Shown here one piece after another: positions 6,611 through 23,904 of a stretch of DNA of 64,000 nt. Position 1 is the stretch's first letter. Every line of letters starts with the position of its first letter. The notes under the pieces are model-generated. The model was not told the DNA's origin. It worked only from the letters and a program-made list of their open reading frames with translations, and searched no databases. The stretch is taken from positions 67,640 through 131,639 of the forward strand of contig NW_018479932.1 of NCBI RefSeq assembly GCF_002113885.1. Reading direction: 5' to 3'. The DNA comes from Mizuhopecten yessoensis. Its lineage: Eukaryota. The translations under genes were made by a program, and so were the position numbers.

Positions 6611-7412
6611 ATAGAAAGCGAAACTCACAGAGTGCACAATCGTTTTCTTTTTAAGTAAGGGAGATAATTCATCAGAAATATTTCAAAACATCCGGGACAA
6701 ATAATTTTATAGTGAAAGCGTGTCAATTAAAAATTTGTTAAGAAAAACGTTATCTATTATTTTTAATTATTATAGTTTTTATTTGAAAATATTTGTAATT
6801 TCATGAGTAAAAAAGCAAGTCACGTTGTAATATTCAAATGGAAATATTCTAAATTAAAAAGTCTAATTAATTTTTGTTTTTTTTGTTAACGAAGTTGGTT
6901 ACATTTTGAATGAATGATTCAAATAGATTACATGTAAAATATTATTAACTTTAGACCCACTTTCATTGGTGAATTTTGTCACTCGCGTACTATCATATTT
7001 TCCCATCTTTTCACACCCGTGATAAAAAAAAAACCACACTTGGTGATGGTTTACGTCCTTCGTTCAGGCGTCCAGATAAAGACAAATTCGATTAAAAAAA
7101 TCCTAGTCTCTCTGAGTGGGAGTACTCCTCGAACTTCATTAATTCTTTTTTAATCAAGTTGACTTTGAGAAGTATTAGAAGATGATTCGTTCCTGATCTG
7201 TTGAGTCGTTCTCTGTGTTTGACGCTAGTCAATGGGAGTTATCGCCCTTGGTACACTTCAGGCGTGCATAGTTGTGTTTAATCACTATTAACCTCCTGTG
7301 GATCATATTGATGTAGAATTATAACTTAATTACCTAACTTTCCTGACAAAGAAATACAATTTCAGCATGCAAAGGACACCATGTTACTGACGCAACAGTG
7401 TGAAAGGATCTA

Positions 7413-8720
7413 CAAGGCCCTTTTTTGGGCCCCGGTATATTCGGATTTTCACCACCTTATTTTGTTCAAAGATTTATGGCATGTTTAATGCAATGTAACA
7501 AAAAGTGACGAAAAGTAATTAAGAAATAATATGTGTAGCAGCTAGCATTGAATGTAACAAATAAATCGTATGAAATCAACAAAAGGATTTAACTGTTAAT
7601 TGCAAGCATTAACTTGAACGAACAACTTAGTCTCTCTTTGCGTTTTCAAAGCATAAACTATCTGACTTTTGGTCAGTGTAACATGTCAAACGCACCTCCT
7701 ACTACTATAAACACTCTAGATCTACTGAGCCTGTTTTACCTACATACATTCATATAGACTAGTATTGTCAGGAAATATTTGCTGTTAGGCAAGGAGATGC
7801 ACTTTGGTCCTTGTACTCTAAATCACAGGAAAAGGTGTTTTTAAGTAAAAAGGCATTGTTGGATATGTATGAAACTTTCACAAATTAAATATCATCGTAT
7901 AACTAACATCTATGCCAAGTTGCATGCTTATCCCCAAATGCTTTCCTTGAGGCTAGGAGACTTAAATTACCAGCAAATCAAACTTCATATATTGAATCAA
8001 TCATGTTACAGTAGTTGTTGTGGCAAATGCCATTTTTGATTTGTAAGTTAACTTTGATAGGTAAAAAAACAAATCAGGACCTGGAACCCACTTCAGACAC
8101 AGGTGTTGAGCAAATATTATGTGATATATATAGTACACAATACTTACAAATGATAACTTATACTTATAGCATATAAAGGGTGTCATGCACCTTTAATTCA
8201 CTTAAAATTGAGAGATATTTGAAATAGCCAAGTTTGAGATGTGTCCAGAAGCCATAACTCAGTATAAAACAAAAGGAAAGTATGTAGTCAATGTGCAATT
8301 TATGTAAATCTACTTAAATGAATGAAGTTGTAACTTTCAAGTTAAGATATTAATTAGAAAGGAAATGATTGAGAAAACAAATTACTTTTCAATTGAAAAT
8401 GACCGAAAAGACTCCCCCGACTTAATCCTTCGTTTTATATAGTGACGATTGAATTTCTGTCATTTTTCATTCTGTTACATATGCCTGTCTAATTTATACA
8501 TGTTTTCAAAGACAGAAATGGTATTATTTTGGTTTTTAAGCTCAATTTGAAAACAGCAAACTATATTTGTAATTTACCCTACCCCTTTTGGTACCCCCAT
8601 GAAACCCACTTACGGTCAAAATTTTACCGTCGTTTTTCCGCATGTCATACAATAGGACATCTTTGAACGAAATAGGGAGGTGAAAATCCGAATATACCGG
8701 GGCCCAAAAAACGGGCCTTG
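7413..8720. mobile_element. Non-autonomous DNA transposon, Tc1/mariner-like (TA target)
   Basis: TIRs of about 60 bp: caaggcccttttttgggccccggtatattcggattttcacc..gttcaaagat at 7413 and its reverse complement ending ccttg at 8720. TA on both sides; no coding capacity. Confidence 0.85.
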
Positions 8721-8961
8721 TAGACACTCATCCTTTGCAATTTTGAGTATGAAACACTGGTAAACAATATAAATCATTATGTTCTCCACCCTTCAAAACC
8801 ACATTCTGAAAATTTGTTGTGGAAGTCACACTTTCTGGGCCATGACAGAATTTTGCCTCAGATGTAGTATGTCAAAATGATTAACATTGTACCATACAGC
8901 TGTCCTTCTAGGCCTTACCGGTAATGTTAGGGGATATATGGTGGAATAACAAAGGTAAGGT

Positions 8962-9141
8962 CAGGGGCATAGCTAGCCCTTCGATTCGGAGACGATTAAT
9001 TTAGGAGCGGGTCCAAGGCAGCGCCTTGGTAGTGGTACATGGGGTGTAACAAGCAGTGTTTTTGTTTTATTTTGGTTGTTGTTCTGTTTGAAAATTTAGT
9101 GGATTCATCTGTGTACCAGCGTATAGGCAGCTAAGCGCCTG
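8962..9141 (+). mobile_element. Short hAT-like MITE, same family as 34883-35064
   Basis: Starts caggggcatagctagccct and ends ggattcatctgtgtaccagcgtataggcagctaagcgcctg, clearly homologous to the 34883 copy. No TSD is preserved. Confidence 0.6.
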
Positions 9142-9940
9142 GCAGTACATTGTTCTAATAATAATACCCGGCCTCCTCTGCTCCGGTCGGGTATTAAATC
9201 GATCCCGTGCCTTGTAATGGAGCAAGCCCGGTGTGAATCACACCAGGGCGATTTTAGAATTAATTGGCATCACATTGGTCCGCATCCATACGTTCTTGTA
9301 ATAGGGTTGAAGTATGAAACATTTCTGTTGATATCCTGCACAACTTGAAGTTAAACTCTGCCTAAAATGTCGTTAAATTATCAAGTTAACGTACGTAGCA
9401 AGCGCAAGTGAAATCTGAATTGACCGCCATGTTGGAAAGTTCGTCTCTCTTCCGATTTAGGTCAGACGTCTAAATATGGGTGTCATGACCCAATATGGAA
9501 GTCGTAGTACATGTTAACATGGCGGCATCAGTATTAATAATATATTTGGCCATGTAAAGGATAATTGAAATGACATCACGCGGACTTGGTTAATTTCGTG
9601 AAAGAGTTTTTTTTTCATTGGTAAGGATTCGTTTTTTCAACAATTATGTAATATTTTGATAACATTATATTCATATGAGGTGTGAATTATATGTAATCTT
9701 ACAGATTAACACTTTCGATTTTGCTCCATAAGTTGTCATAGGACCGCTTCGTAGCTCTGACGCCGTAACATATAAAAAAAATCGTCGTCAGAAAGCTACG
9801 TTATCGCAGTTAAGCGCCTGGAGCCGCGTAAAACCCCCATGAATAAGACGTATTTCAAAAATTAGTCCAGTACTGTTAATTTCAGAATTAATATCAAGGT
9901 AACGGTAAACCTTGGAAACTGAGAAATCCACTAGCAGTGT

Positions 9941-10072: not shown

Positions 10073-13000
10073 AAGTATGGCCGTAAAATAGTCACAGGTT
10101 ATCGTAAACTGTAATTGATACAGCATGCCAAAAATTAATTTGACTTCACCGTGCAGCTTGTTTGGCCTTTATCAGACCTTTTGGTGATGCTAGGTCACAA
10201 AAAGGCGTTATTCCAACTCGGTCTATGCATACATGTATGATTGCGTCACTGAATCAGATTCCTTTTTTTATTCACTATGAGCATCAAACGCGAGCTCACC
10301 AGTACAGATTAAATACAACCATTGAAAATTCAACTACAGAATATTATCATTATAGATACACAAATAATGATTTAAATCTCGCAATTATTCATGAGCGTAT
10401 ATGGTTAAGTTGAATCAATTCTTTGCTCGAAAATGTTCGTGAATGAACATTGTCTTCCGGCACAGAGACTATCAGACGACATGCATCAATAAGTTATGAT
10501 ACTTACAAGTTATATATATATACATGTATATATATATAATAAAAAGGGATTAAATGTCCATGTGAAGGAAGTAAAAATAGAAAAAATAAGATTAACGACC
10601 GACTAAGCACCTATCTGCTTTATACAAAAGAACAACGTCGTGACGTCACAATTACATGTCATCACACTACAATAGTAACGTGACGTCACGAAGTACACAA
10701 GATTGGTGGACAATTTGGCGTAAAATTTTACTGTGGCCTGTTGAGGCTTGGCTTTAATATTTTGATTAGTTGGTCTTCTTTCGTTTCTCTTAAAATAGTG
10801 TCTGATGAAAATATATATTTATATTTTTTGTCTCGGGGAAATAAAATATTTGAAAAAGAAAAAGAAAAAAACTTATAAATTATTTTAACATTAAAATCAA
10901 AACAATCATTCTTTCTTGTTAACGCATCGCTTAAAGTCCTATTATTGGTTCTGTCAAAGCTTTATCTATCTATAGTAATATTCCAAAATTAAAGATCATA
11001 TATAAATGTATCTTAGATACTTTAATTATGTAAACTGTAAGCTGATTGGTCCGTTTTATTTTAGAATTTCTCTATTTAGGACTTATTAGCTTGTTATATT
11101 CTGTGCTGGGGTACACAATATATTGCCTTCTTGTTCATGCACAACAAGGTTGGCACTTACGTACACGAAGGAAGTATGCATGTGGCATGTTCTTTGAGCT
11201 AAAAATGTACGGCAAGCTTAAAAACAGGTTTGAATGTCGAAACGTAGAAAACCTCCTTCTTGTCTTCCGTCCATATATATTCACACTTTCCTATGCTTTC
11301 GATCAATCTTTGCTTTGTTTTTCCCTTTTGCGCGCCTGGTGATAATCTTCGGATGAAGGACTACCAGTCTACCGACAAAAGCATAAAGCTGTCGTTTTCT
11401 CACTTTAGGTGACCTCCTAAGAATTCCCTGCTGACCCCCTACAGGGGTCACCTCGTGATGGCGATTGACCTTCAAATTAAGACATTTTTTGCCTGAAACG
11501 CGTCAAACCTATTGTATCTTACTGTGTATATTTACATTCTTGCTGTTTGTTCTGTACATAAATCTACCAACAGAAAACAACTGCCATAAGACCATAAATA
11601 CACTATGAATACAACGATTCTCGTGCAACCAGTCAGCTGATTTCACACTCAATGATAACTTCATATTACTACGCACAGTACCGTTTCTGAGAAGAGTAAT
11701 CTCCCTTTCCCCGAGATAACGTGTAATTGCTAGAAATAATAATAAACATTACAAAAATCATAAATGGCGCACCATTGTACCATTAATATTACTATTTTTA
11801 ATTAAAAATTAAATGAAATATTTATAACATTGTCACATTAAATACTGACTTCCGACTCGCAATCGGTTCCTCGTGGTCACGAACTTTCTAGCACACAAAC
11901 GTCCGGCTGGGTAATCCCCGTGACATCAACTTTGTAATGACACAGGGCACTTCAACCGTCAACTTATCATCATTTACATCTGCAGGTTTTTTGGCAAACA
12001 GCACATTCAACGACTGTACATTTAACTTCAAATGAGCTCTAGATATAGGCCGATGCCTACTGCCGACGGGTATGGTTATGATTCTAATTCACTACGTTCA
12101 ACCGAACGTAAAGCATTTATCATATAAACTCAACACCTATGTATGGGAGTGGCCTTCGACGGTCAACCGTTTTATTAAAGGAAGAAGTACATGAAATACA
12201 AAGGGCACGTGCCCGATCCTTCTTCCCTTCTCCCTTCTTTCGTCCTGAATCCGGATCCTGGCAGACGCTAGGAATTCCCTTCCGGAATCATCCCTGGAGT
12301 TCGTGCCTGTCTCAAGGAAAACGGGGACATTTCGTAATTCTATGATTTAACAAAAGGAAATTTCTTGAAGTGAATCGATGAACCGTCAAGACTTAAATGA
12401 CTATGTTACCGTCAAACTACCTGTATTACTATATAGACACCCGTGTCGCACCTGTAACACGTGCGGTTACACGTTACACGTCCCGCCTCACGCGGCTACC
12501 TGTGTCCCCTTGGCCTCATATCCGGACACTAGTACACCTGTACTACATGTACCTGTACTACATACATGACGGTATACCGTGACTATAATAAATTTAAATA
12601 TATAATATGCAGTGTATCAACTTTCAAAAAAGAAAGGAATATCAAGTGTTGGTTACATGTATTATTAGATTCTACATATATATTTTCGTTTCAACAAAAT
12701 CAGCTGATCAGCGGAAGTGGAATATTTGAAGTGTGTGTGTAGGCTGGAGTTCTGGATGTTACTTTTTATGGTTTCCTGTCCGATACTGATATCAAAAATA
12801 CTTAATTTACAAAAAGTGTTGTAACTTTGTTTTATTGTAGTTCAATCGTAACGTAAATATATGAATTAACGCGCAATCGCGCTCCACAGGATATGTAGAT
12901 CAGCTACTGCCAGTCATTGCCGCAATGTTCAGCTGTACATGAAAAAAATCCATTCAATATCTATATAATAATTACAAATGTGAACTTTTTTTCTGATAAC

Positions 13001-13620: not shown

Positions 13621-14554
13621 TATATGTGAATTACAGTTCGTCATTATAGTTCTTGTGTGTGGTTATTTGTGTTTGGCACATACATGCACAAATATGGACG
13701 ACAATGTTCACGAAAATGAAACATACACCGAGATCAGCCATTATTTATAAAACACGCATTTAAATTTCAACAAAAGTAATGTTCATGTATGTAATTATGT
13801 AAAATTACACGTCTCTTAGAATTTCGGTATGGATTTTAAATATGAAAGCTATTTAAATAAGCTGTTTGGCTCCGTTTAAATTGTTTAGCTTATTGTCCAA
13901 AATGTTTTGCACATATTGTACAATTTTAGTACAAAAGTACACCAGAAAATATCTGATAGTAAAGATTTAAGATAGCAATGAACAGGTGTTCCCCTTTTAA
14001 CTCCACTTTTGATGTGTAACAGATTCAAATGTAATGAAATGAGGTGAGATATTATTTACCACATTGCTTAAAGTACAATAGCGAGGCACGATCGCAGGTA
14101 CCGGTCGCGCACGTGCAGCACGTGTATAATTGTGTTTAAAGATGATATTGGTACACTTGTTAGTATGTTTGTATATTTAATAAGTTTGTATGCGGTAGGG
14201 AAGAAGAGATAATCATTTCCTCAAACTGATGCCAAATATATAGTTGTCATGCATGACTTGCATGACTTTCATGCCGTACGCTTGTACTTTGGTCATACAT
14301 GCTAGTACAATGTAACTCGGTCGCTGCTGAAGGAATACACGTGTTCAATCATATCTGTAATTCTCCCGATATAGTGTACATCTTTACAGAATAACAGCAA
14401 TCCCGTTATGTCTATCGCGGAAAAGTACAAGTCATTAACTGTCAAGATTCAAACTGATGAATAAAGGTTTATCAACCATCCTAGAACGTTCGCATAAAAT
14501 GATAGTCGAAGCCTATATTTACATGTACCCTGGATTGTTAATATAAACTTAGTT

Positions 14555-18974: not shown

Positions 18975-19635
18975 TCTTTTGGCGTCTTCTCATGCAGTTC
19001 CTGTTGTTTCTTTTCCTTTTGGTGTGGTGTCTCCTCGGTTCCTGTTGTTGTTTTTCCTCTTGTTTTGGCGTCTCCTCGGTTCTTGTTGTTGCTTTTCCTT
19101 TTGTTTTGGCGTCTCCTGTGTTTCCGTTGTTTCTTTTCTTTTTGTTTTGGTGTCTCCTCGGTTTCCGTTGTTGTTTTCCTTTTGTTTTGGCGTCTCATCG
19201 GTTTCCGTTGTTGCTTTTTCTTTTATTTTTTAGGGTCTTCTCTGTTTCCATTGTTGCTTTTTCTTTTGTTTTGGCGTCTCCTATGGTCCTCTTGTTGCTT
19301 TTTCATTTGGCGCTTTTGGCGTCTTCTCTGTTTCCATTGTTGCTTCTCCTTTTGTTTTGGCGTCTCATATGGTCCTCTTGTTGCTTTTTCTTTTGTTTTG
19401 GCGTCTCCTCGGTTTCTGTTGTTGCTAATTGTTTGTTTTGATGTCTCCTCAGTTCCTGCAGTTGCCCTCCTTTCGTGTTGGTGTCTCCTTAATTCTTGTT
19501 GTTGTCTTTCTTTTGTTTTGGCGTCTCCTAAGTTCCCGTTGTTGCTTTTCCTTTTTACTTTGGCATCTCCTCACTTTATGTTGTCGTGTGTTTCTGTTGT
19601 GATGTCTCGTCAGATTCTGTTTATATTGTTTCCCT
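18975..19635. repeat. Degenerate minisatellite, about 39-40-bp unit ttttgttttggcgtctcctcggtttccgttgttgctttcc, about 16 copies
   Basis: Periodic ttttgttttggcgtctc anchors. This repeat explains the Leu/Phe-rich spurious ORFs here. Confidence 0.9.
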
Positions 19636-21688
19636 TTTGTTTTGTTGTTTGATTGGTTCCTGATGATGTCCGCCTTTCGTTTTGTTGTCTGATTGGTTCC
19701 TGATGGTGTCCGCCTTTTGTTTTGTTATCTGATTGGTTCCTGATGGTGTCCGCCTTTTGTTTTGTTGTCTGATTGGTTCCTGATGGTGTCCGCCTTTTGT
19801 TTTGTTGTCTGATTGGTTCCTGATGGTGTCCGCCTTTTGTTTTGTTGTCTGATTGGTTCCTGATGGTGTCCGCCTTTTGTTTTGTTGTCTGATTGGTTCC
19901 TGATGGTGTCCGCCTTTTGTTTTGTTGTCTGATTGGTTCCTGATGGTGTCCGCCTTTTGTTTTGTTGTCTGATTGGTTCCTGATGGTGTCCGCCTTTTGT
20001 TTTGTTGTCTGATTGGTTCCTGATGGTGTCCGCCTTTTGTTTTGTTGTCTGATTGGTTCCTGATGGTGTCCGCCTTTTGTTTTGTTGTCTGATTGGTTCC
20101 TGATGGTGTCCGCCTTTTGTTTTGTTGTCTGATTGGTTCCTGATGGTGTCCGCCTTTTGTTTTGTTGTCTGATTGGTTCCTGATGGTGTCCGCCTTTTGT
20201 TTTGTTGTCTGATTGGTTCCTGATGGTGTCCGCCTTTTGTTTTGTTGTCTGATTGGTTCCTGATGGTGTCCGCCTTTTGTTTTGTTGTCTGATTGGTTCC
20301 TGATGGTGTCCGCCTTTTGTTTTGTTGTCTGATTGGTTCCTGATGGTGTCCGCCTTTTGTTTTGTTGTCTGATTGGTTCCTGATGGTGTCCGCCTTTTGT
20401 TTTGTTGTCTGATTGGTTCCTGATGGTGTCCGCCTTTTGTTTTGTTGTCTGATTGGTTCCTGATGGTGTCCGCCTTTTGTTTTGTTGTCTGATTGGTTCC
20501 TGATGGTGTCCGCCTTTTGTTTTGTTGTCTGATTGGTTCCTGATGGTGTCCGCCTTTTGTTTTGTTGTCTGATTGGTTCCTGATGGTGTCCGCCTTTTGT
20601 TTTGTTGTCTGATTGGTTCCTGATGGTGTCCGCCTTTTGTTTTGTTGTCTGATTGGTTCCTGATGGTGTCCGCCTTTTGTTTTGTTGTCTGATTGGTTCC
20701 TGATGGTGTCCGCCTTTTGTTTTGTTGTCTGATTGGTTCCTGATGGTGTCCGCCTTTTGTTTTGTTGTCTGATTGGTTCCTGATGGTGTCCGCCTTTTGT
20801 TTTGTTGTCTGATTGGTTCCTGATGGTGTCCGCCTTTTGTTTTGTTGTCTGATTGGTTCCTGATGGTGTCCGCCTTTTGTTTTGTTGTCTGATTGGTTCC
20901 TGATGGTGTCCGCCTTTTGTTTTGTTGTCTGATTGGTTCCTGATGGTGTCCGCCTTTTGTTTTGTTGTCTGATTGGTTCCTGATGGTGTCCGCCTTTTGT
21001 TTTGTTGTCTGATTGGTTCCTGATGGTGTCCGCCTTTTGTTTTGTTGTCTGATTGGTTCCTGATGGTGTCCGCCTTTTGTTTTGTTGTCTGATTGGTTCC
21101 TGATGGTGTCCGCCTTTTGTTTTGTTGTCTGATTGGTTCCTGATGGTGTCCGCCTTTTGTTTTGTTGTCTGATTGGTTCCTGATGGTGTCCGCCTTTTGT
21201 TTTGTTGTCTGATTGGTTCCTGATGGTGTCCGCCTTTTGTTTTGTTGTCTGATTGGTTCCTGATGGTGTCCGCCTTTTGTTTTGTTGTCTGATTGGTTCC
21301 TGATGGTGTCCGCCTTTTGTTTTGTTGTCTGATTGGTTCCTGATGGTGTCCGCCTTTTGTTTTGTTGTCTGATTGGTTCCTGATGGTGTCCGCCTTTTGT
21401 TTTGTTGTCTGATTGGTTCCTGATGGTGTCCGCCTTTTGTTTTGTTGTCTGATTGGTTCCTGATGGTGTCCGCCTTTTGTTTTGTTGTCTGATTGGTTCC
21501 TGATGGTGTCCGCCTTTTGTTTTGTTGTCTGATTGGTTCCTGATGGTGTCCGCCTTTTATTTTGTTGTCTGATTGGTTCCTGATGGTGTCCGCCTTTTGT
21601 TTCTGTTGTCTGATTGGTTCCTGATGGTGTCCGCCTTTTGTTTTGTTGTCTGATTGGTTCCTAATGGTGTCCGCCTTTCGTTTTTGTG
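19636..21688. repeat. Near-perfect 40-bp tandem array ttttgttttgttgtctgattggttcctgatggtgtccgcc, about 51 copies
   Basis: The line pattern repeats exactly every 120 bp (3 units). Variants occur only in the terminal few units. Confidence 0.98.
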
Positions 21689-21952
21689 TTTTTTACTTTC
21701 AATTATATTTTGTTACTGACTTCGATTTTATCAGGATCACAATTTATATGAATTTATCAAAACACCTTTACTCTGATTTAAGCTATTCGATAAGTTTGGA
21801 CACTATTACGGAAGATTAAATTAATATATTAATTTTACAAATACATTCTCTTTCGAATGTTACATGTATATAAGTCAGAAATATCCATGGTGAGTGGCGG
21901 TAGCTGTATTGATTAAATTTCAAAAATTACTTTATTGCGTTGGATATGAGTA

Positions 21953-22510
21953 CAATCTGATTAAAATCATCTGTTACATGGCTCCGCCTGAACATCTGAA
22001 TGTGCCGCGGTCAGGGTCACGTTCATGTGACCTTTAGATGAACCAATCAGAGGCGCGCTGGCAAAAGTTTGCCAGCGAATCGGAATATCATGGTTGATAG
22101 ATAAATAGCGAGGGGTATCGTACAGATTAGTTTTCCAAAACAAATATGGCGGCGGCAACTGACGCTTTTACGACGCCAAGGAAAACGTACCCATTGGGTA
22201 ATAATTGTGTAGGCAACACCGCCATACAGTCTTTCTTCTCTAATAAAGCTTCGAGTATCTTTTTCTGTTCGGGTTTCAGACGATCAATCTCAAATAACTC
22301 CAGAACTTTCGCATCATTCTCATCAATGTCCGCCATAATTGTTATAACTCCGATCGCCCTTTTGAAAGAGGGTCTCTGATTGGTCAAAATTTAATGAGTA
22401 TTTATAAATATAAAGGTCACCTGAACGTGACCCTGACCGCGGCACACTCAGATGTTCAGGCGTAGTACGAAGTTAACGAAGCCATGACACATATGATTTT
22501 AATCAGATTG
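21953..22510. mobile_element. Internally deleted DNA transposon, AcademH-like (helicase-encoding Academ lineage)
   Basis: TIRs of about 85 and 100 bp (caatctgattaaaatcat..gcctgaacatctga.tgtgccgcggtcagggtcacgttca.gtgaccttta). Perfect 10-bp TSD gatatgagta at 21943-21952 and 22511-22520. Contains a RecQ-like helicase N-terminus. Confidence 0.85.
22208..22336 (-). pseudogene. N-terminal fragment of a RecQ-like SF2 helicase inside the transposon
   Basis: MADIDENDAKVLELFEIDRLKPEQKKILEALLEKKDCMAVLPT matches the F..L(K/R)P.Q..L..KD..AVLPT(G.GKS) pattern (motif 0/Q and start of Walker A). It breaks exactly before GxGKS. Confidence 0.75.
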
Positions 22511-23904
22511 GATATGAGTATTACCAGTATCGTATCAATACATTACGTGTACCGTTCTTTTGCAGTAATAACGGTATCCATAGTACCGTACAAGATAATG
22601 ACGCGCATCTTTTTAATCAAATGAAATAATATCCTGTCGGAGCAAGCATCATTAATGAACTAAAAGCTTCAGTTGAATTTGGTTTGTGTTTTACGTCCTA
22701 TTACCAACTATGATCTTTTAAGGAGTTTCCACCCTTCGTAATACACATGTTTTTTCTTTTCGTATTTTCGTGTCGTCATTTCCGTATTGCGTATCGGGCA
22801 TTCCATTACCGTGGTGTAAATTATAGTAACACCGGGTAAACAATAGTACACGTGCGTGACGATGATATGTCAACACCCGATATCGAGACTTAACTTGGAA
22901 ATGTGTGATCACACTTACTTCAGAAATAAAGCTTATGATACAAAGACATTAATTAACTCACGGGCAAACACTGACATATGATCAGACGACTTCCAAGAAG
23001 GTCGTATATGAGGCGCATGGAATGCAGACTGATGTGTTTTGTTTACCGACCTCACCTGTACGTATCACGTGCTAACAGTAGTTCACAAGCTCTTGGTCGC
23101 TACGACTTTTGTTGTCGAGCGAGTTACGCTCTGTCAGATAAATCGGTTCACAAATGCAATTACAATAACTCTGTTAAAAAGTGGTTTGTAAAATATCAAG
23201 ATCCCTATAAAATGCAAGTGCATGTGCGTGCACGTAATAACGGCATACCATGCGATAGCCTATGGTTACATATGTACCTGACATGTTAATATACCATGCG
23301 TAAGCAGGCTATGGAATGATGTCCAAAGTGTACATGATTGAGAGTAATTTTGTTCCATAAAAGAACAGTAAATTGACAATTAAATCTAGTAATTTAAATT
23401 ACTTCCGTCGTTTTTTGGTATAGTAAAGAAAATAAGTGTCATTGTATAAATTCTATCCCTCTGAAAAAAGTTCCGTTTTTTTTCAAGGTAGACAACTCTC
23501 ATCAGGATCAAAATTATTGTGAAATGTAAAAAAAAAAAAAAATTATAAAGACTTTGTGTGCATTTGGGTCAATTTTTCAGTCTTTTTGTATGAAACTATG
23601 TGTCCTGTTTGCTTTTAGCTTGTATTTAGTAACTGTTATCCATACAATTTCAATACAAAACGCTTTTTGTAACATGTTGTAGATATTTTATGATAAATAA
23701 AATATTTGTAGGGTTGATTAGCAATGTTTCTTTTTATTATTTTATTGTTGTTATAGTTTGAACAATGCCACACGCTCAAAAAATGTAAAAGTATTGAATT
23801 TGACAAAAATTCAATATTTCGATATTTTTTACAAAAAAATCCCCAGTTCATCGGAATGCTTAGATTTTCAAAAAATCGTCTCTACATAGTGACATAACCA
23901 TCAT

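What the first reader, a model, noticed from the sequence alone, without database searches (positions are those of the whole stretch)
21943..22520. Compact transposon retaining two convergent gene starts, one a RecQ-like helicase (AcademH-like deletion derivative)
Seen: a 558-bp element with long TIRs (CA..TG ends) and a perfect 10-bp TSD. The minus-strand ATG at 22336 encodes a RecQ-like N-terminus cut off just before Walker A. A plus-strand ATG at 22146 (MAAATDAFTTPRKTYP) points toward it, and the two meet near 22200-22207. Established (from memory): the AcademH lineage of Academ transposons encodes a transposase plus a RecQ-type helicase and makes 9-10-bp TSDs. Inference: a multi-kb internal deletion fused the 5' ends of both genes. 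The intact TSD suggests fairly recent mobilisation by an autonomous helicase-carrying partner that may be undescribed in this genome.
Basis: partly seen in the sequence, partly recalled or inferred. Interest (0 to 1): 0.8.

Follow-up and report, generated by a model that had tools for sequence, protein, structure and literature searches.

The report
Scallop miniature helicase-transposon deletion derivative
This 558-bp stretch is one of several hundred dead-end copies of a miniature jumping gene in the Yesso scallop. It was made when the middle of a two-gene (transposase plus RecQ-like helicase) transposon was deleted, so it is a sound example of a known kind rather than something new.

Summary
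Window 21953-22510 is a 558-bp element with CAATCTG...CAGATTG ends, long imperfect inverted repeats and a perfect 10-bp target-site duplication.

It belongs to a family in Mizuhopecten yessoensis with at least 743 first-look candidates. 246 places carry the same deletion junction. Twenty-one of 30 copies have exact 9- or 10-bp duplications.

- The minus-strand ORF is the first 43 codons of a RecQ-like helicase, cut before GxGKS. A longer copy on contig C76734 continues into DEAD and Helicase_C domains.
- The plus-strand ORF is the first 22 codons of the partner transposase. A second long copy (C4871) and a Pecten maximus element continue it into a conserved CxxC zinc finger.
- That transposase is Pfam DUF6589. 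A confident model aligns best with Hermes, P-element, ISCth4 and RAG1 transposases and has a conserved D-D-E triad.
- The convergent transposase/helicase pair recurs in mussel, amphioxus and sea anemone.
- These features fit the published AcademH definition. Direct comparison with reference Academ transposases was not possible.

"Recent mobilisation" is not supported. The window copy is 2.3% from the family consensus, and both long copies are decayed.

The scan's first readers flagged the same family, and long AcademH-type elements, on other DNA of this genome.

The parts
21943..21952 (.). Left copy of the 10-bp target-site duplication (GATATGAGTA)
   Evidence: Across 30 family copies there are 15 exact 9-bp and 6 exact 10-bp duplications.
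21953..22067 (+). Left terminal inverted repeat arm; terminus CAATCTGATTAAAATC
   Evidence: The same terminus occurs in Pecten maximus. Mytilus edulis has CAATCTCATTAAAATC.
22015..22032 (.). Subterminal palindrome GGTCAC-N6-GTGACC in the left arm; candidate transposase or host-factor binding site (inferred)
   Evidence: Read. It is mirrored at 22415-22432 and conserved in the Pecten element.
22043..22047 (+). CCAAT box upstream of the transposase start; putative promoter element within the arm (inferred)
   Evidence: It is mirrored at 22379-22383 and also present in the Pecten and Mytilus elements.
22056..22077 (.). Perfect 10+10 palindrome CGCTGGCAAA-AG-TTTGCCAGCG, specific to the left (transposase) end
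   Evidence: I7. It is conserved in Pecten maximus as CGCTGGCAGAATCTGTCCAGCG.
22146..22211 (+). Remnant of the transposase gene: start codon plus 21 codons (MAAATDAFTTPRKTYPLGNNCV; family consensus MAAGTDVSTTPRKTYPLGNNCV)
   Evidence: It continues as LCGF on G000:C4871:365654. It is homologous to the Pecten N-terminus ...TTTPRKSHGLCNLCILCGFSF and to Mytilus coruscus P0069.
22208..22211 (.). Deletion junction with 3-4 bp microhomology, (C)GTA, shared by both parent sequences
   Evidence: The same junction 34-mer occurs at 246 genomic places and 0 times in the reversed control.
22208..22336 (-). Remnant of the RecQ-like helicase gene: start codon plus 42 codons, ending LPT just before the GxGKS Walker A motif
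   Evidence: The long copy L055:636-995 continues LPTGYGKS and hits DEAD at 8e-12. RecQ chains are the best solved relatives.
22359..22510 (-). Right terminal inverted repeat arm, carrying a 16-bp and a 21-bp insertion relative to the left arm
   Evidence: It is 87% identical to the helicase-side end of the long copy (L055:529-820).
22511..22520 (.). Right copy of the 10-bp target-site duplication

Best explanation
The element is a non-autonomous miniature derivative (MITE-like, 558 bp) of a two-gene cut-and-paste DNA transposon of the AcademH type in the scallop Mizuhopecten yessoensis.

The parent is about 8 kb long. It carries two convergent genes, each starting about 175-195 bp inside a terminal inverted repeat that contains a CCAAT box:
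- a DDE transposase of about 800-1100 aa, with an N-terminal CxxC...CxxC zinc finger and a Pfam DUF6589 catalytic core;
- a RecQ-like SF2 helicase.

One internal deletion joined codon 22 of the transposase to codon 43 of the helicase at a 3-4 bp microhomology. This is the signature of interrupted gap repair or microhomology-mediated end joining after excision (inferred). The deletion removed all catalytic sequence but kept both ends.

That single derivative was then mobilised in trans by transposase, and presumably helicase, from autonomous relatives. It amplified to several hundred copies and made 9- or 10-bp target duplications.

The copies now decay neutrally. The window copy is an ordinary, moderately old member.

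Shown: the anatomy, copy number, shared junction, TSD lengths, identity of both gene remnants, DDE fold and triad of the transposase, and the conserved two-gene layout in other animals.

Inferred: trans-mobilisation, the repair origin of the deletion, promoter activity in the arms, and any role of the helicase in transposition.
For: Family and ends
- At least 743 candidates; all 40 scored are full length at 94-96% identity.
- TSDs of 9 bp (15 copies) and 10 bp (6 copies) among 30 copies.
- The same junction 34-mer occurs at 246 places against 0 in the control.

Helicase side
- The long copy on C76734 matches element positions 257-558 at 87% and then continues LPTGYGKS.
- It hits DEAD at 8e-12 and Helicase_C at 1e-17.
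- RecQ, RECQ1, WRN and BLM are the best solved relatives.

Transposase side
- C4871:365654 continues the plus-strand ORF as ...NNCV-LCGF. It lies 3.9 kb upstream of, and on the same strand as, a DUF6589 hit, and it faces a helicase hit.
- The Pecten maximus element has the same terminus, CCAAT box, palindrome and N-terminal peptide, followed by the DUF6589 exons.
- The N-terminus of Mytilus coruscus P0069 is alike.

DUF6589 is a DDE transposase
- The AF2 model has pLDDT 87.6.
- VIA-align gives Z 10.3 for Hermes, 9.6 for the P element, 7.3 for ISCth4 and 6.5 for RAG1. The top 23 rows are all transposases.
- D222 lies on strand 1, D381 after strand 4/5 and E688 on a helix. They are conserved in 31/31, 33/35 and 36/36 residue-bearing rows.

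Layout and published criteria
- The convergent DUF6589/helicase layout is seen at a dozen or more loci in this genome. It is also seen in Mytilus edulis, Nematostella and Branchiostoma.
- AcademH makes 9-10 bp TSDs (PMC10045372).
- AcademH encodes DEAD plus Helicase_C (PMC10799480).
- Academ elements are abundant in bivalves (PMC10294476).
Against: - No direct alignment to reference Academ/AcademH transposases was possible. Kojima 2020 and Repbase are not held, and no paper links PF20231 to Academ. The superfamily label is therefore by architecture and TSD length only.
- The stored part of the published bivalve library labels its Academ entries Academ-1 only and does not contain these termini.
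- The C76734 long copy lacks a closing terminus within 20 kb and is rearranged.
Its position is known, but not its sequence.
- No intact master at 95% or more identity to the miniature family was found.
- No TSD could be read on an autonomous copy. The Nematostella flanks do not match.
Confidence: 0.85

Rival explanations
1. A Mutator-like (MuDR/MULE) miniature element. That superfamily also has long TIRs and 9-10 bp TSDs, and on this reading the gene fragments are captured host sequence (Pack-MULE style).
For: The 9-10 bp TSDs and long TIRs are also typical of MuDR. ISCth4 (IS256, the bacterial kin of Mutator) is among the structural matches at Z 7.3.
Against: The long copies sharing these ends encode DUF6589, not a MULE or Transposase_mut domain. 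Pfam finds only DUF6589 in 12 full-length relatives. The helicase start sits at the same distance from the same terminus in scallop, Pecten and mussel elements, so it is the element's own gene and not a capture. Hermes and the P element match better than ISCth4.
Confidence: 0.04
2. A derivative of a helicase-carrying Kolobok lineage. KolobokH, and Kolobok-1_CCri with a RecQ helicase on the complementary strand, are known.
For: PMC9587614 reports Kolobok lineages that encode RecQ helicases, one of them on the opposite strand as here.
Against: From my own knowledge, Kolobok makes 4-bp TTAA target duplications; here they are 9-10 bp with no TTAA. KolobokH is reported only from fungi, with the helicase fused downstream of the transposase. 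Here there are two convergent genes in animals.
Confidence: 0.03
3. The DUF6589-plus-helicase elements form a superfamily of their own. On this reading they merely resemble AcademH in layout and TSD length, and the miniature element derives from that unnamed group.
For: No sequence comparison with reference Academ transposases could be run. Pfam still calls the core a domain of unknown function, and no paper links it to Academ. The published bivalve Academ library, in its stored part, holds only Academ-1 entries without these termini.
Against: Every published AcademH criterion that could be tested is met: transposase plus DEAD/Helicase_C helicase, 9-10 bp TSD, and presence in animals. DUF6589 is reported as enriched in a rust fungus, Puccinia striiformis. 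Academ elements are reported as most abundant in rust fungi (Pucciniomycotina), and the only fungal Academ entries in Repbase are from Puccinia graminis.
Confidence: 0.07

Closest known systems
AcademH lineage of the Academ superfamily (Kojima 2020, Mobile DNA 11:15; cited via PMC10045372 and PMC10799480)
   Same: It is a cut-and-paste element with TIRs. It has a DDE transposase plus a separate DEAD/Helicase_C (RecQ-like) helicase gene, makes 9- or 10-bp TSDs, and occurs in animals. Academ elements are abundant in bivalves (PMC10294476).
   Different: The window element is a 558-bp non-coding deletion derivative, not an autonomous copy. Homology of its parent's transposase (Pfam DUF6589) to reference Academ transposases was not tested here. 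A family with several hundred miniature copies that keep both start codons may or may not already be in Repbase.
Internal-deletion derivatives of autonomous DNA transposons (for example Ds from Ac, or KP and other deleted P elements; from my own knowledge)
   Same: Both termini and subterminal regions are kept and the coding middle is lost. The junction lies at a short microhomology. The derivative is mobilised in trans and can outnumber its parent.
   Different: Here the deletion fused the 5' ends of two convergent genes, so the derivative keeps two facing start codons and their upstream regions only about 190 bp apart.
hAT (Hermes) and P-element transposases
   Same: These are the best structural matches of the parent's transposase. 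All have an RNase H-like DDE core split by a large all-alpha insertion domain (Z 10.3 and 9.6).
   Different: There is no detectable sequence similarity. The TSD is 9-10 bp rather than 8 bp. A second, helicase gene is present, and the N-terminal zinc finger is ZAD-like rather than BED or THAP.

Membership tests
AcademH (Academ superfamily) | Target-site duplications of 9 or 10 bp (PMC10045372) | tested here: met
   among 30 copies, 15 have exact 9-bp and 6 have exact 10-bp TSDs. Of the other 9, at least four are 9-10-mers with one mismatch; the rest were not classified.
AcademH (Academ superfamily) | Autonomous copies encode a helicase (DEAD + Helicase_C, RecQ-like) in addition to the transposase | tested here: met
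   for the long copy on C76734. Pairing with the transposase gene is seen at a dozen or more loci and in mussel, sea anemone and amphioxus.
AcademH (Academ superfamily) | The transposase is homologous to reference Academ DDE transposases | not testable with these tools
   Repbase sequences and Kojima 2020 are not held. Published Academ-1 consensus sequences exist only as supplement text without a reference, so that comparison was left out.
AcademH (Academ superfamily) | The transposase is an RNase H-fold DDE enzyme | tested here: met
   The model has pLDDT 87.6. Hermes gives Z 10.3, the P element 9.6, ISCth4 7.3 and RAG1 6.5. D222, D381 and E688 are conserved and placed on strand 1, after strand 4/5 and on a helix.
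AcademH (Academ superfamily) | Found in animals and fungi | tested here: inconclusive
   Animals are shown: Bivalvia, Branchiostoma, Saccoglossus and Nematostella. Fungi rest only on reports that DUF6589 is enriched in Puccinia striiformis and that Academ is most abundant in Pucciniomycotina; this was not tested here.
Non-autonomous internal-deletion derivative (MITE-like) | Shares its termini and subterminal sequence with a longer coding element, lacks coding capacity, and many copies carry one and the same junction | tested here: met
   Right end versus L055 at 87%. The left-end junction anchor is exact on C4871. There are 246 places with the junction. The ORF remnants decay randomly among copies.
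Kolobok (including KolobokH) | 4-bp TTAA target-site duplication (from my own knowledge) | tested here: not met
   TSDs are 9-10 bp and show no TTAA.
MuDR / MULE | Transposase with a MULE / Transposase_mut domain | tested here: not met
   Pfam finds only DUF6589, plus a weak zf-AD hit, in the partner transposases.

The most novel reading that the evidence does not exclude
Each of the several hundred miniature copies keeps both arms with their CCAAT boxes and both start codons, facing each other across about 190 bp. If both arms still fire as promoters, the copies would give convergent, overlapping transcripts. The resulting double-stranded RNA would cover exactly the 5' ends of the transposase and helicase mRNAs. 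The miniature family would then act as a dispersed small-RNA trigger that silenced its own autonomous parents, which would fit the finding that only decayed long copies remain.
Probability: 0.1. Interest if true: 0.55.

Novelty: new member of a known kind. Interest (0 to 1): 0.3.

Why it matters
The finding gives a clean, fully mapped example of how a helicase-carrying DNA transposon produces a high-copy miniature derivative. There was one deletion at a microhomology, and both gene starts were kept.

It also ties a Pfam "domain of unknown function" (DUF6589, 1,778 cluster representatives at E up to 0.001) to a DDE transposase fold with an identifiable catalytic triad. That domain shows a conserved partnership with a RecQ-like helicase from sea anemone to amphioxus. 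This helps genome annotators, since many such genes are listed as "uncharacterized protein" or "C2H2/ZAD domain-containing protein".

It also offers a natural substrate (the 558-bp element) for testing what the helicase does in transposition.

It does not change what is known about transposon biology.

Tried and rejected
- Pfam on the 69-aa and 77-aa ORFs of the window copy gave nothing useful; they are too short.
- The closing terminus of the C76734 long copy was sought in 20 kb. Hits at 10839 and 10979 have the wrong orientation. The hit at 13700-13718 is a 14-bp chance match. The locus is rearranged, with satellite arrays and an inverted duplication of the flank.
- The first AF2 model of the transposase (P0038, shallow alignment) was poor in the beta regions, and Foldseek found nothing. 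A second model from full-length relatives worked.
- A sequence search of the transposase against solved structures found only the inserted C2H2 finger.
- XPG nuclease domains, which would have tied DUF6589 to AcademX, were looked for in ten long relatives. None were found.
- Kojima 2020 could not be read by PMC id, DOI or PubMed id. A search for Yuan and Wessler 2011 failed.
- The published bivalve TE library was searched for these termini and for Academ-H labels. There was no match, and the file is cut. Comparing its Academ-1 consensus sequences with DUF6589 was left out, because supplement text has no sequence reference.
- The empty-site test failed. The contigs of three DNA runs do not cover the unique flanks, so no conclusion is possible.
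- The RNA reads are mostly read-through from other loci, and no transcript starts were called.
- No TSD could be read for the Nematostella element, and no right end was found for the Pecten element.
I did not try to read them by other means.
Full report
**What is there.** The window sequence and the repeat finder confirm a 558-bp element at 21953-22510. It starts CAATCTGATT and ends AATCAGATTG. It is flanked by GATATGAGTA at 21943-21952 and 22511-22520. The exact direct repeat runs to 13 bp only because the final TTG of the right arm matches the flank.

The inverted-repeat arms are long but imperfect. They span 21953-22067 and 22359-22510, in blocks 81-93% complementary, and the right arm carries a 16-bp and a 21-bp insertion. 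Each arm holds a GGTCAC-N6-GTGACC palindrome (22015-22032 and 22415-22432) and a CCAAT box (22043-22047, mirrored at 22379-22383). The left arm alone has the palindrome CGCTGGCAAA-AG-TTTGCCAGCG (22056-22077).

The minus-strand ATG at 22336 opens MADIDENDAKVLELFEIDRLKPEQKKILEALLEKKDCMAVLPT, followed by unrelated residues. The plus-strand ATG at 22146 opens MAAATDAFTTPRKTYPLGNNCV.

**It is a high-copy family.** The window lies on contig C76605 of a 988-Mb assembly. That assembly is Mizuhopecten yessoensis: a protein encoded on one of its contigs is named so by NCBI, and the assembly size agrees with the published one.

- A DNA search of the genome gave at least 743 first-look candidates. All 40 that were scored were full length at 94-96% identity.
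- In 30 fetched copies the ends are invariant. The flanks show exact duplications of 9 bp (15 copies) or 10 bp (6 copies). Of the other nine, at least four are 9-10-mers with one mismatch.
- No target consensus is evident.
- Copies differ from their consensus by 2.4% on average (2.0% outside CpG) and from each other by 4.7%. The window copy is 2.3% from consensus.
- At that divergence about two thirds of copies should still have perfect TSDs, as observed. The intact TSD therefore says nothing about recency.
- The ORF remnants carry random frameshifts, stops and lost ATGs among copies, so they are not under selection.

**The helicase side.** A pattern that demands the helicase codons to continue into GG found G000:C76734:352297. 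In that locus (L055) element positions 257-558 match at 87%, and the match stops exactly at window 22209. The ORF then continues ...CMAVLPTGYGKSLPFQ....

- This exon hits Pfam DEAD at 8e-12.
- A downstream exon hits Helicase_C at 1e-17. It carries a cysteine-rich tail reminiscent of the RecQ zinc-binding subdomain.
- Among solved structures, the best relatives of both exons are RecQ, RECQ1, WRN and BLM.

**The transposase side.** On the opposite strand of L055 lies an ORF that hits Pfam DUF6589. It is the last exon of a multi-exon gene (NCBI LOC110443113), which can be traced for more than 6 kb on the minus strand. This long copy is scrambled. It contains satellite arrays, segmental duplications and an inverted copy of its own flank, and no closing terminus was found within 20 kb.

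A second pattern kept the left-hand junction anchor but forbade the miniature element's continuation. Its one perfect hit was C4871:365654. It reads ...AATAATTGCGTA-CTATGTGGGTTT, that is ...NNCV-LCGF.

That place is 3.9 kb upstream of, and on the same strand as, a DUF6589 hit at C4871:369567-370646. It faces helicase hits at 371730-373057 on the other strand. From these coordinates the C4871 element is about 7.9 kb long. Its transposase exon has four stop codons.

Independent confirmation comes from other bivalves.

- In Pecten maximus (L070) the same terminus, CAATCTGATTAAAATCAG, is followed by a CCAAT box and the CGCTGGCAG...CCAGCG palindrome. An ATG then opens MSAPLGASLTTTPRKSHGLCNLCILCGFSF..., and the DUF6589 exons follow downstream.
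- A Mytilus coruscus gene model starts MDLKSPATPRRVYYLSNICVICGFSF.

The plus-strand ATG of the miniature element is therefore the real transposase start. The lost continuation is a CxxC...CxxC zinc finger. It gives weak zf-AD hits in full-length relatives, which UniRef calls ZAD domain-containing proteins.

**The junction.** The transposase-derived sequence runs through codon 22 (GTA, 22209-22211). The helicase-derived sequence runs through codon 43 (22208-22210 on the minus strand). The two parents share GTA there, or CGTA if the master used ACG for that threonine, as the family consensus does.

The 34-mer across the junction occurs at 246 places with up to three mismatches and never in the reversed control. 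One deletion event therefore founded the family. The window copy has TG where the consensus has CG at 22208, a CpG transition.

Other, rarer deletion derivatives exist. One junction is at C3722:9507. An 85-bp micro-derivative joins 21980 to 22454. It is seen in DNA contigs and RNA reads and at 15 genomic places.

**Is DUF6589 a transposase?** Sequence searches against solved structures found only an inserted C2H2 finger. A first model from a shallow alignment was useless.

A profile search of 1.84 billion representatives found 1,778 relatives at E up to 0.001. Full-length ones of 800-1,100 aa come from bivalves, three Branchiostoma species, Saccoglossus and Nematostella.

A model built on 38 of them reached pLDDT 87.6 and pTM 0.84. 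Foldseek alone gave only weak matches (best E 0.03), but they were enriched for transposases. VIA-align then gave the following:

| Match | Z | Aligned residues |
|---|---|---|
| Hermes transposase | 10.3 | 300 |
| P-element transposase | 9.6 | 337 |
| ISCth4 transposase | 7.3 | 253 |
| RAG1 | 6.5 | 351 |

The top 23 rows are all DDE transposases with an alpha-helical insertion domain.

Three motifs carry the candidate triad: DNxD (D222, on strand 1), GDQLT (D381, just after strand 4/5) and DLxxE (E688, on the helix after the insertion). They are conserved in 31/31, 33/35 and 36/36 residue-bearing rows. This is the canonical placement of a DDE triad. I take it as good evidence that DUF6589 is the catalytic core of a cut-and-paste transposase.

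**The two-gene layout is general.**
- In this genome, DUF6589 and helicase hits lie next to each other, mostly convergent, at a dozen or more loci of several diverged families. Some have long open frames.
- Mytilus edulis has DUF6589 (+) followed by Helicase_C and DEAD genes (-), then the terminus CAATCTCATTAAAATC about 160 bp upstream of a helicase ATG. A CCAAT box lies in between.
- Nematostella vectensis and Branchiostoma floridae show the same convergent pair.

**Classification.** Published statements that I could read say three things:
- AcademH makes 9- or 10-bp TSDs, whereas AcademX makes 3-4 bp (PMC10045372).
- AcademH contributes DEAD and Helicase_C domains (PMC10799480).
- Academ elements are especially abundant in bivalves (PMC10294476).

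All testable criteria are met. The defining paper (Kojima 2020) and Repbase sequences are not held. No paper links PF20231 to Academ. Homology to reference Academ transposases therefore remains untested.

There are three rivals.
- RecQ-carrying Kolobok lineages (PMC9587614) are excluded by TSD length.
- MuDR is excluded by the absence of a MULE domain.
- An unnamed sister group cannot be excluded, but it is unlikely.

**How it most likely works.**
- The miniature element keeps everything needed in cis: the termini, the subterminal palindromes and both arms. It keeps nothing needed in trans.
- The parent family's DDE transposase supplied staggered 9-10 bp cuts at the target. This step is inferred.
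- What the helicase contributes is unknown.
- The deletion at a microhomology fits interrupted gap repair after excision (inferred).
- With only two decayed long copies left (86-87% identity in the shared parts), the family now looks immobile unless a related family cross-mobilises it.

**Expression and polymorphism.** These could not be settled.
- The contigs of three DNA runs do not cover the unique flanks.
- RNA raw reads cover the element at low depth in both orientations. However, 82% of the laid reads run on into unlike sequence, so they come from other copies or from read-through. No transcript starts were called.

**Earlier notes of this scan.** First readers flagged another copy of the same kind of miniature element (s1-568239) on other DNA of this genome. 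They also flagged long AcademH-type elements (s1-507978, with a "GDQLT transposase", and s1-528241). The GDQLT motif agrees with the second catalytic aspartate found here. A follow-up note (s1-528016) called the genome a scallop, which one search confirms.

**Verdict.** The element is a new member of a known kind, of modest interest. The useful by-product is the functional reading of DUF6589.

Noticed in passing
window 18997-21684: A 40-bp minisatellite of about 63 units in two sequence variants (92% and 99% matches), strongly strand-skewed. It ends about 260 bp upstream of the element.
   Followed up: no
window 22688-23060 and beyond: Another very high-copy repeat just downstream of the element. 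Its summed contig depth in all DNA runs is as high as over the miniature element. Its identity was not determined.
   Followed up: no
window 21953-21980 joined to 22454-22510: An 85-bp micro-derivative made only of the outer parts of the two arms. It is seen in DNA contigs and in 119 RNA reads, and loose-end flanks with a nearly uniform consensus suggest most reads come from one expressed locus. Its junction occurs at 15 genomic places and 0 times in the control.
   Followed up: partly
L055 (G000:C76734:351500-361499) 1-208, 6705-9149; L056: Arrays of a satellite of about 145 bp fill an intron of the transposase gene and flank the long copy. The 325 bp outside the helicase-side terminus (204-528) recur inverted at 8185-8524, so the locus has been rearranged.
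   Followed up: partly
L055:4256-4549 (+): An ORF with the motif ...KGHTAYYACERCIVKGTW... and no Pfam hit lies between the helicase and the transposase genes. It may be a fragment of an unrelated transposon inserted there.
   Followed up: partly
proteins P0151, P0164, P0168 and relatives: Pfam DUF6589 proteins (1,778 cluster representatives) look like DDE transposases with a ZAD-like N-terminal zinc finger and a C2H2 finger inside the insertion domain. Public annotation calls them uncharacterized, C2H2-type or ZAD domain-containing proteins.
   Followed up: yes
G000:C3722:9507-9540: A different deletion derivative of the same parent. The same left-hand sequence is joined deeper inside the helicase remnant (...TTGCGTA-TCTTTTTCTGTT), again at a GTA microhomology.
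   Followed up: no
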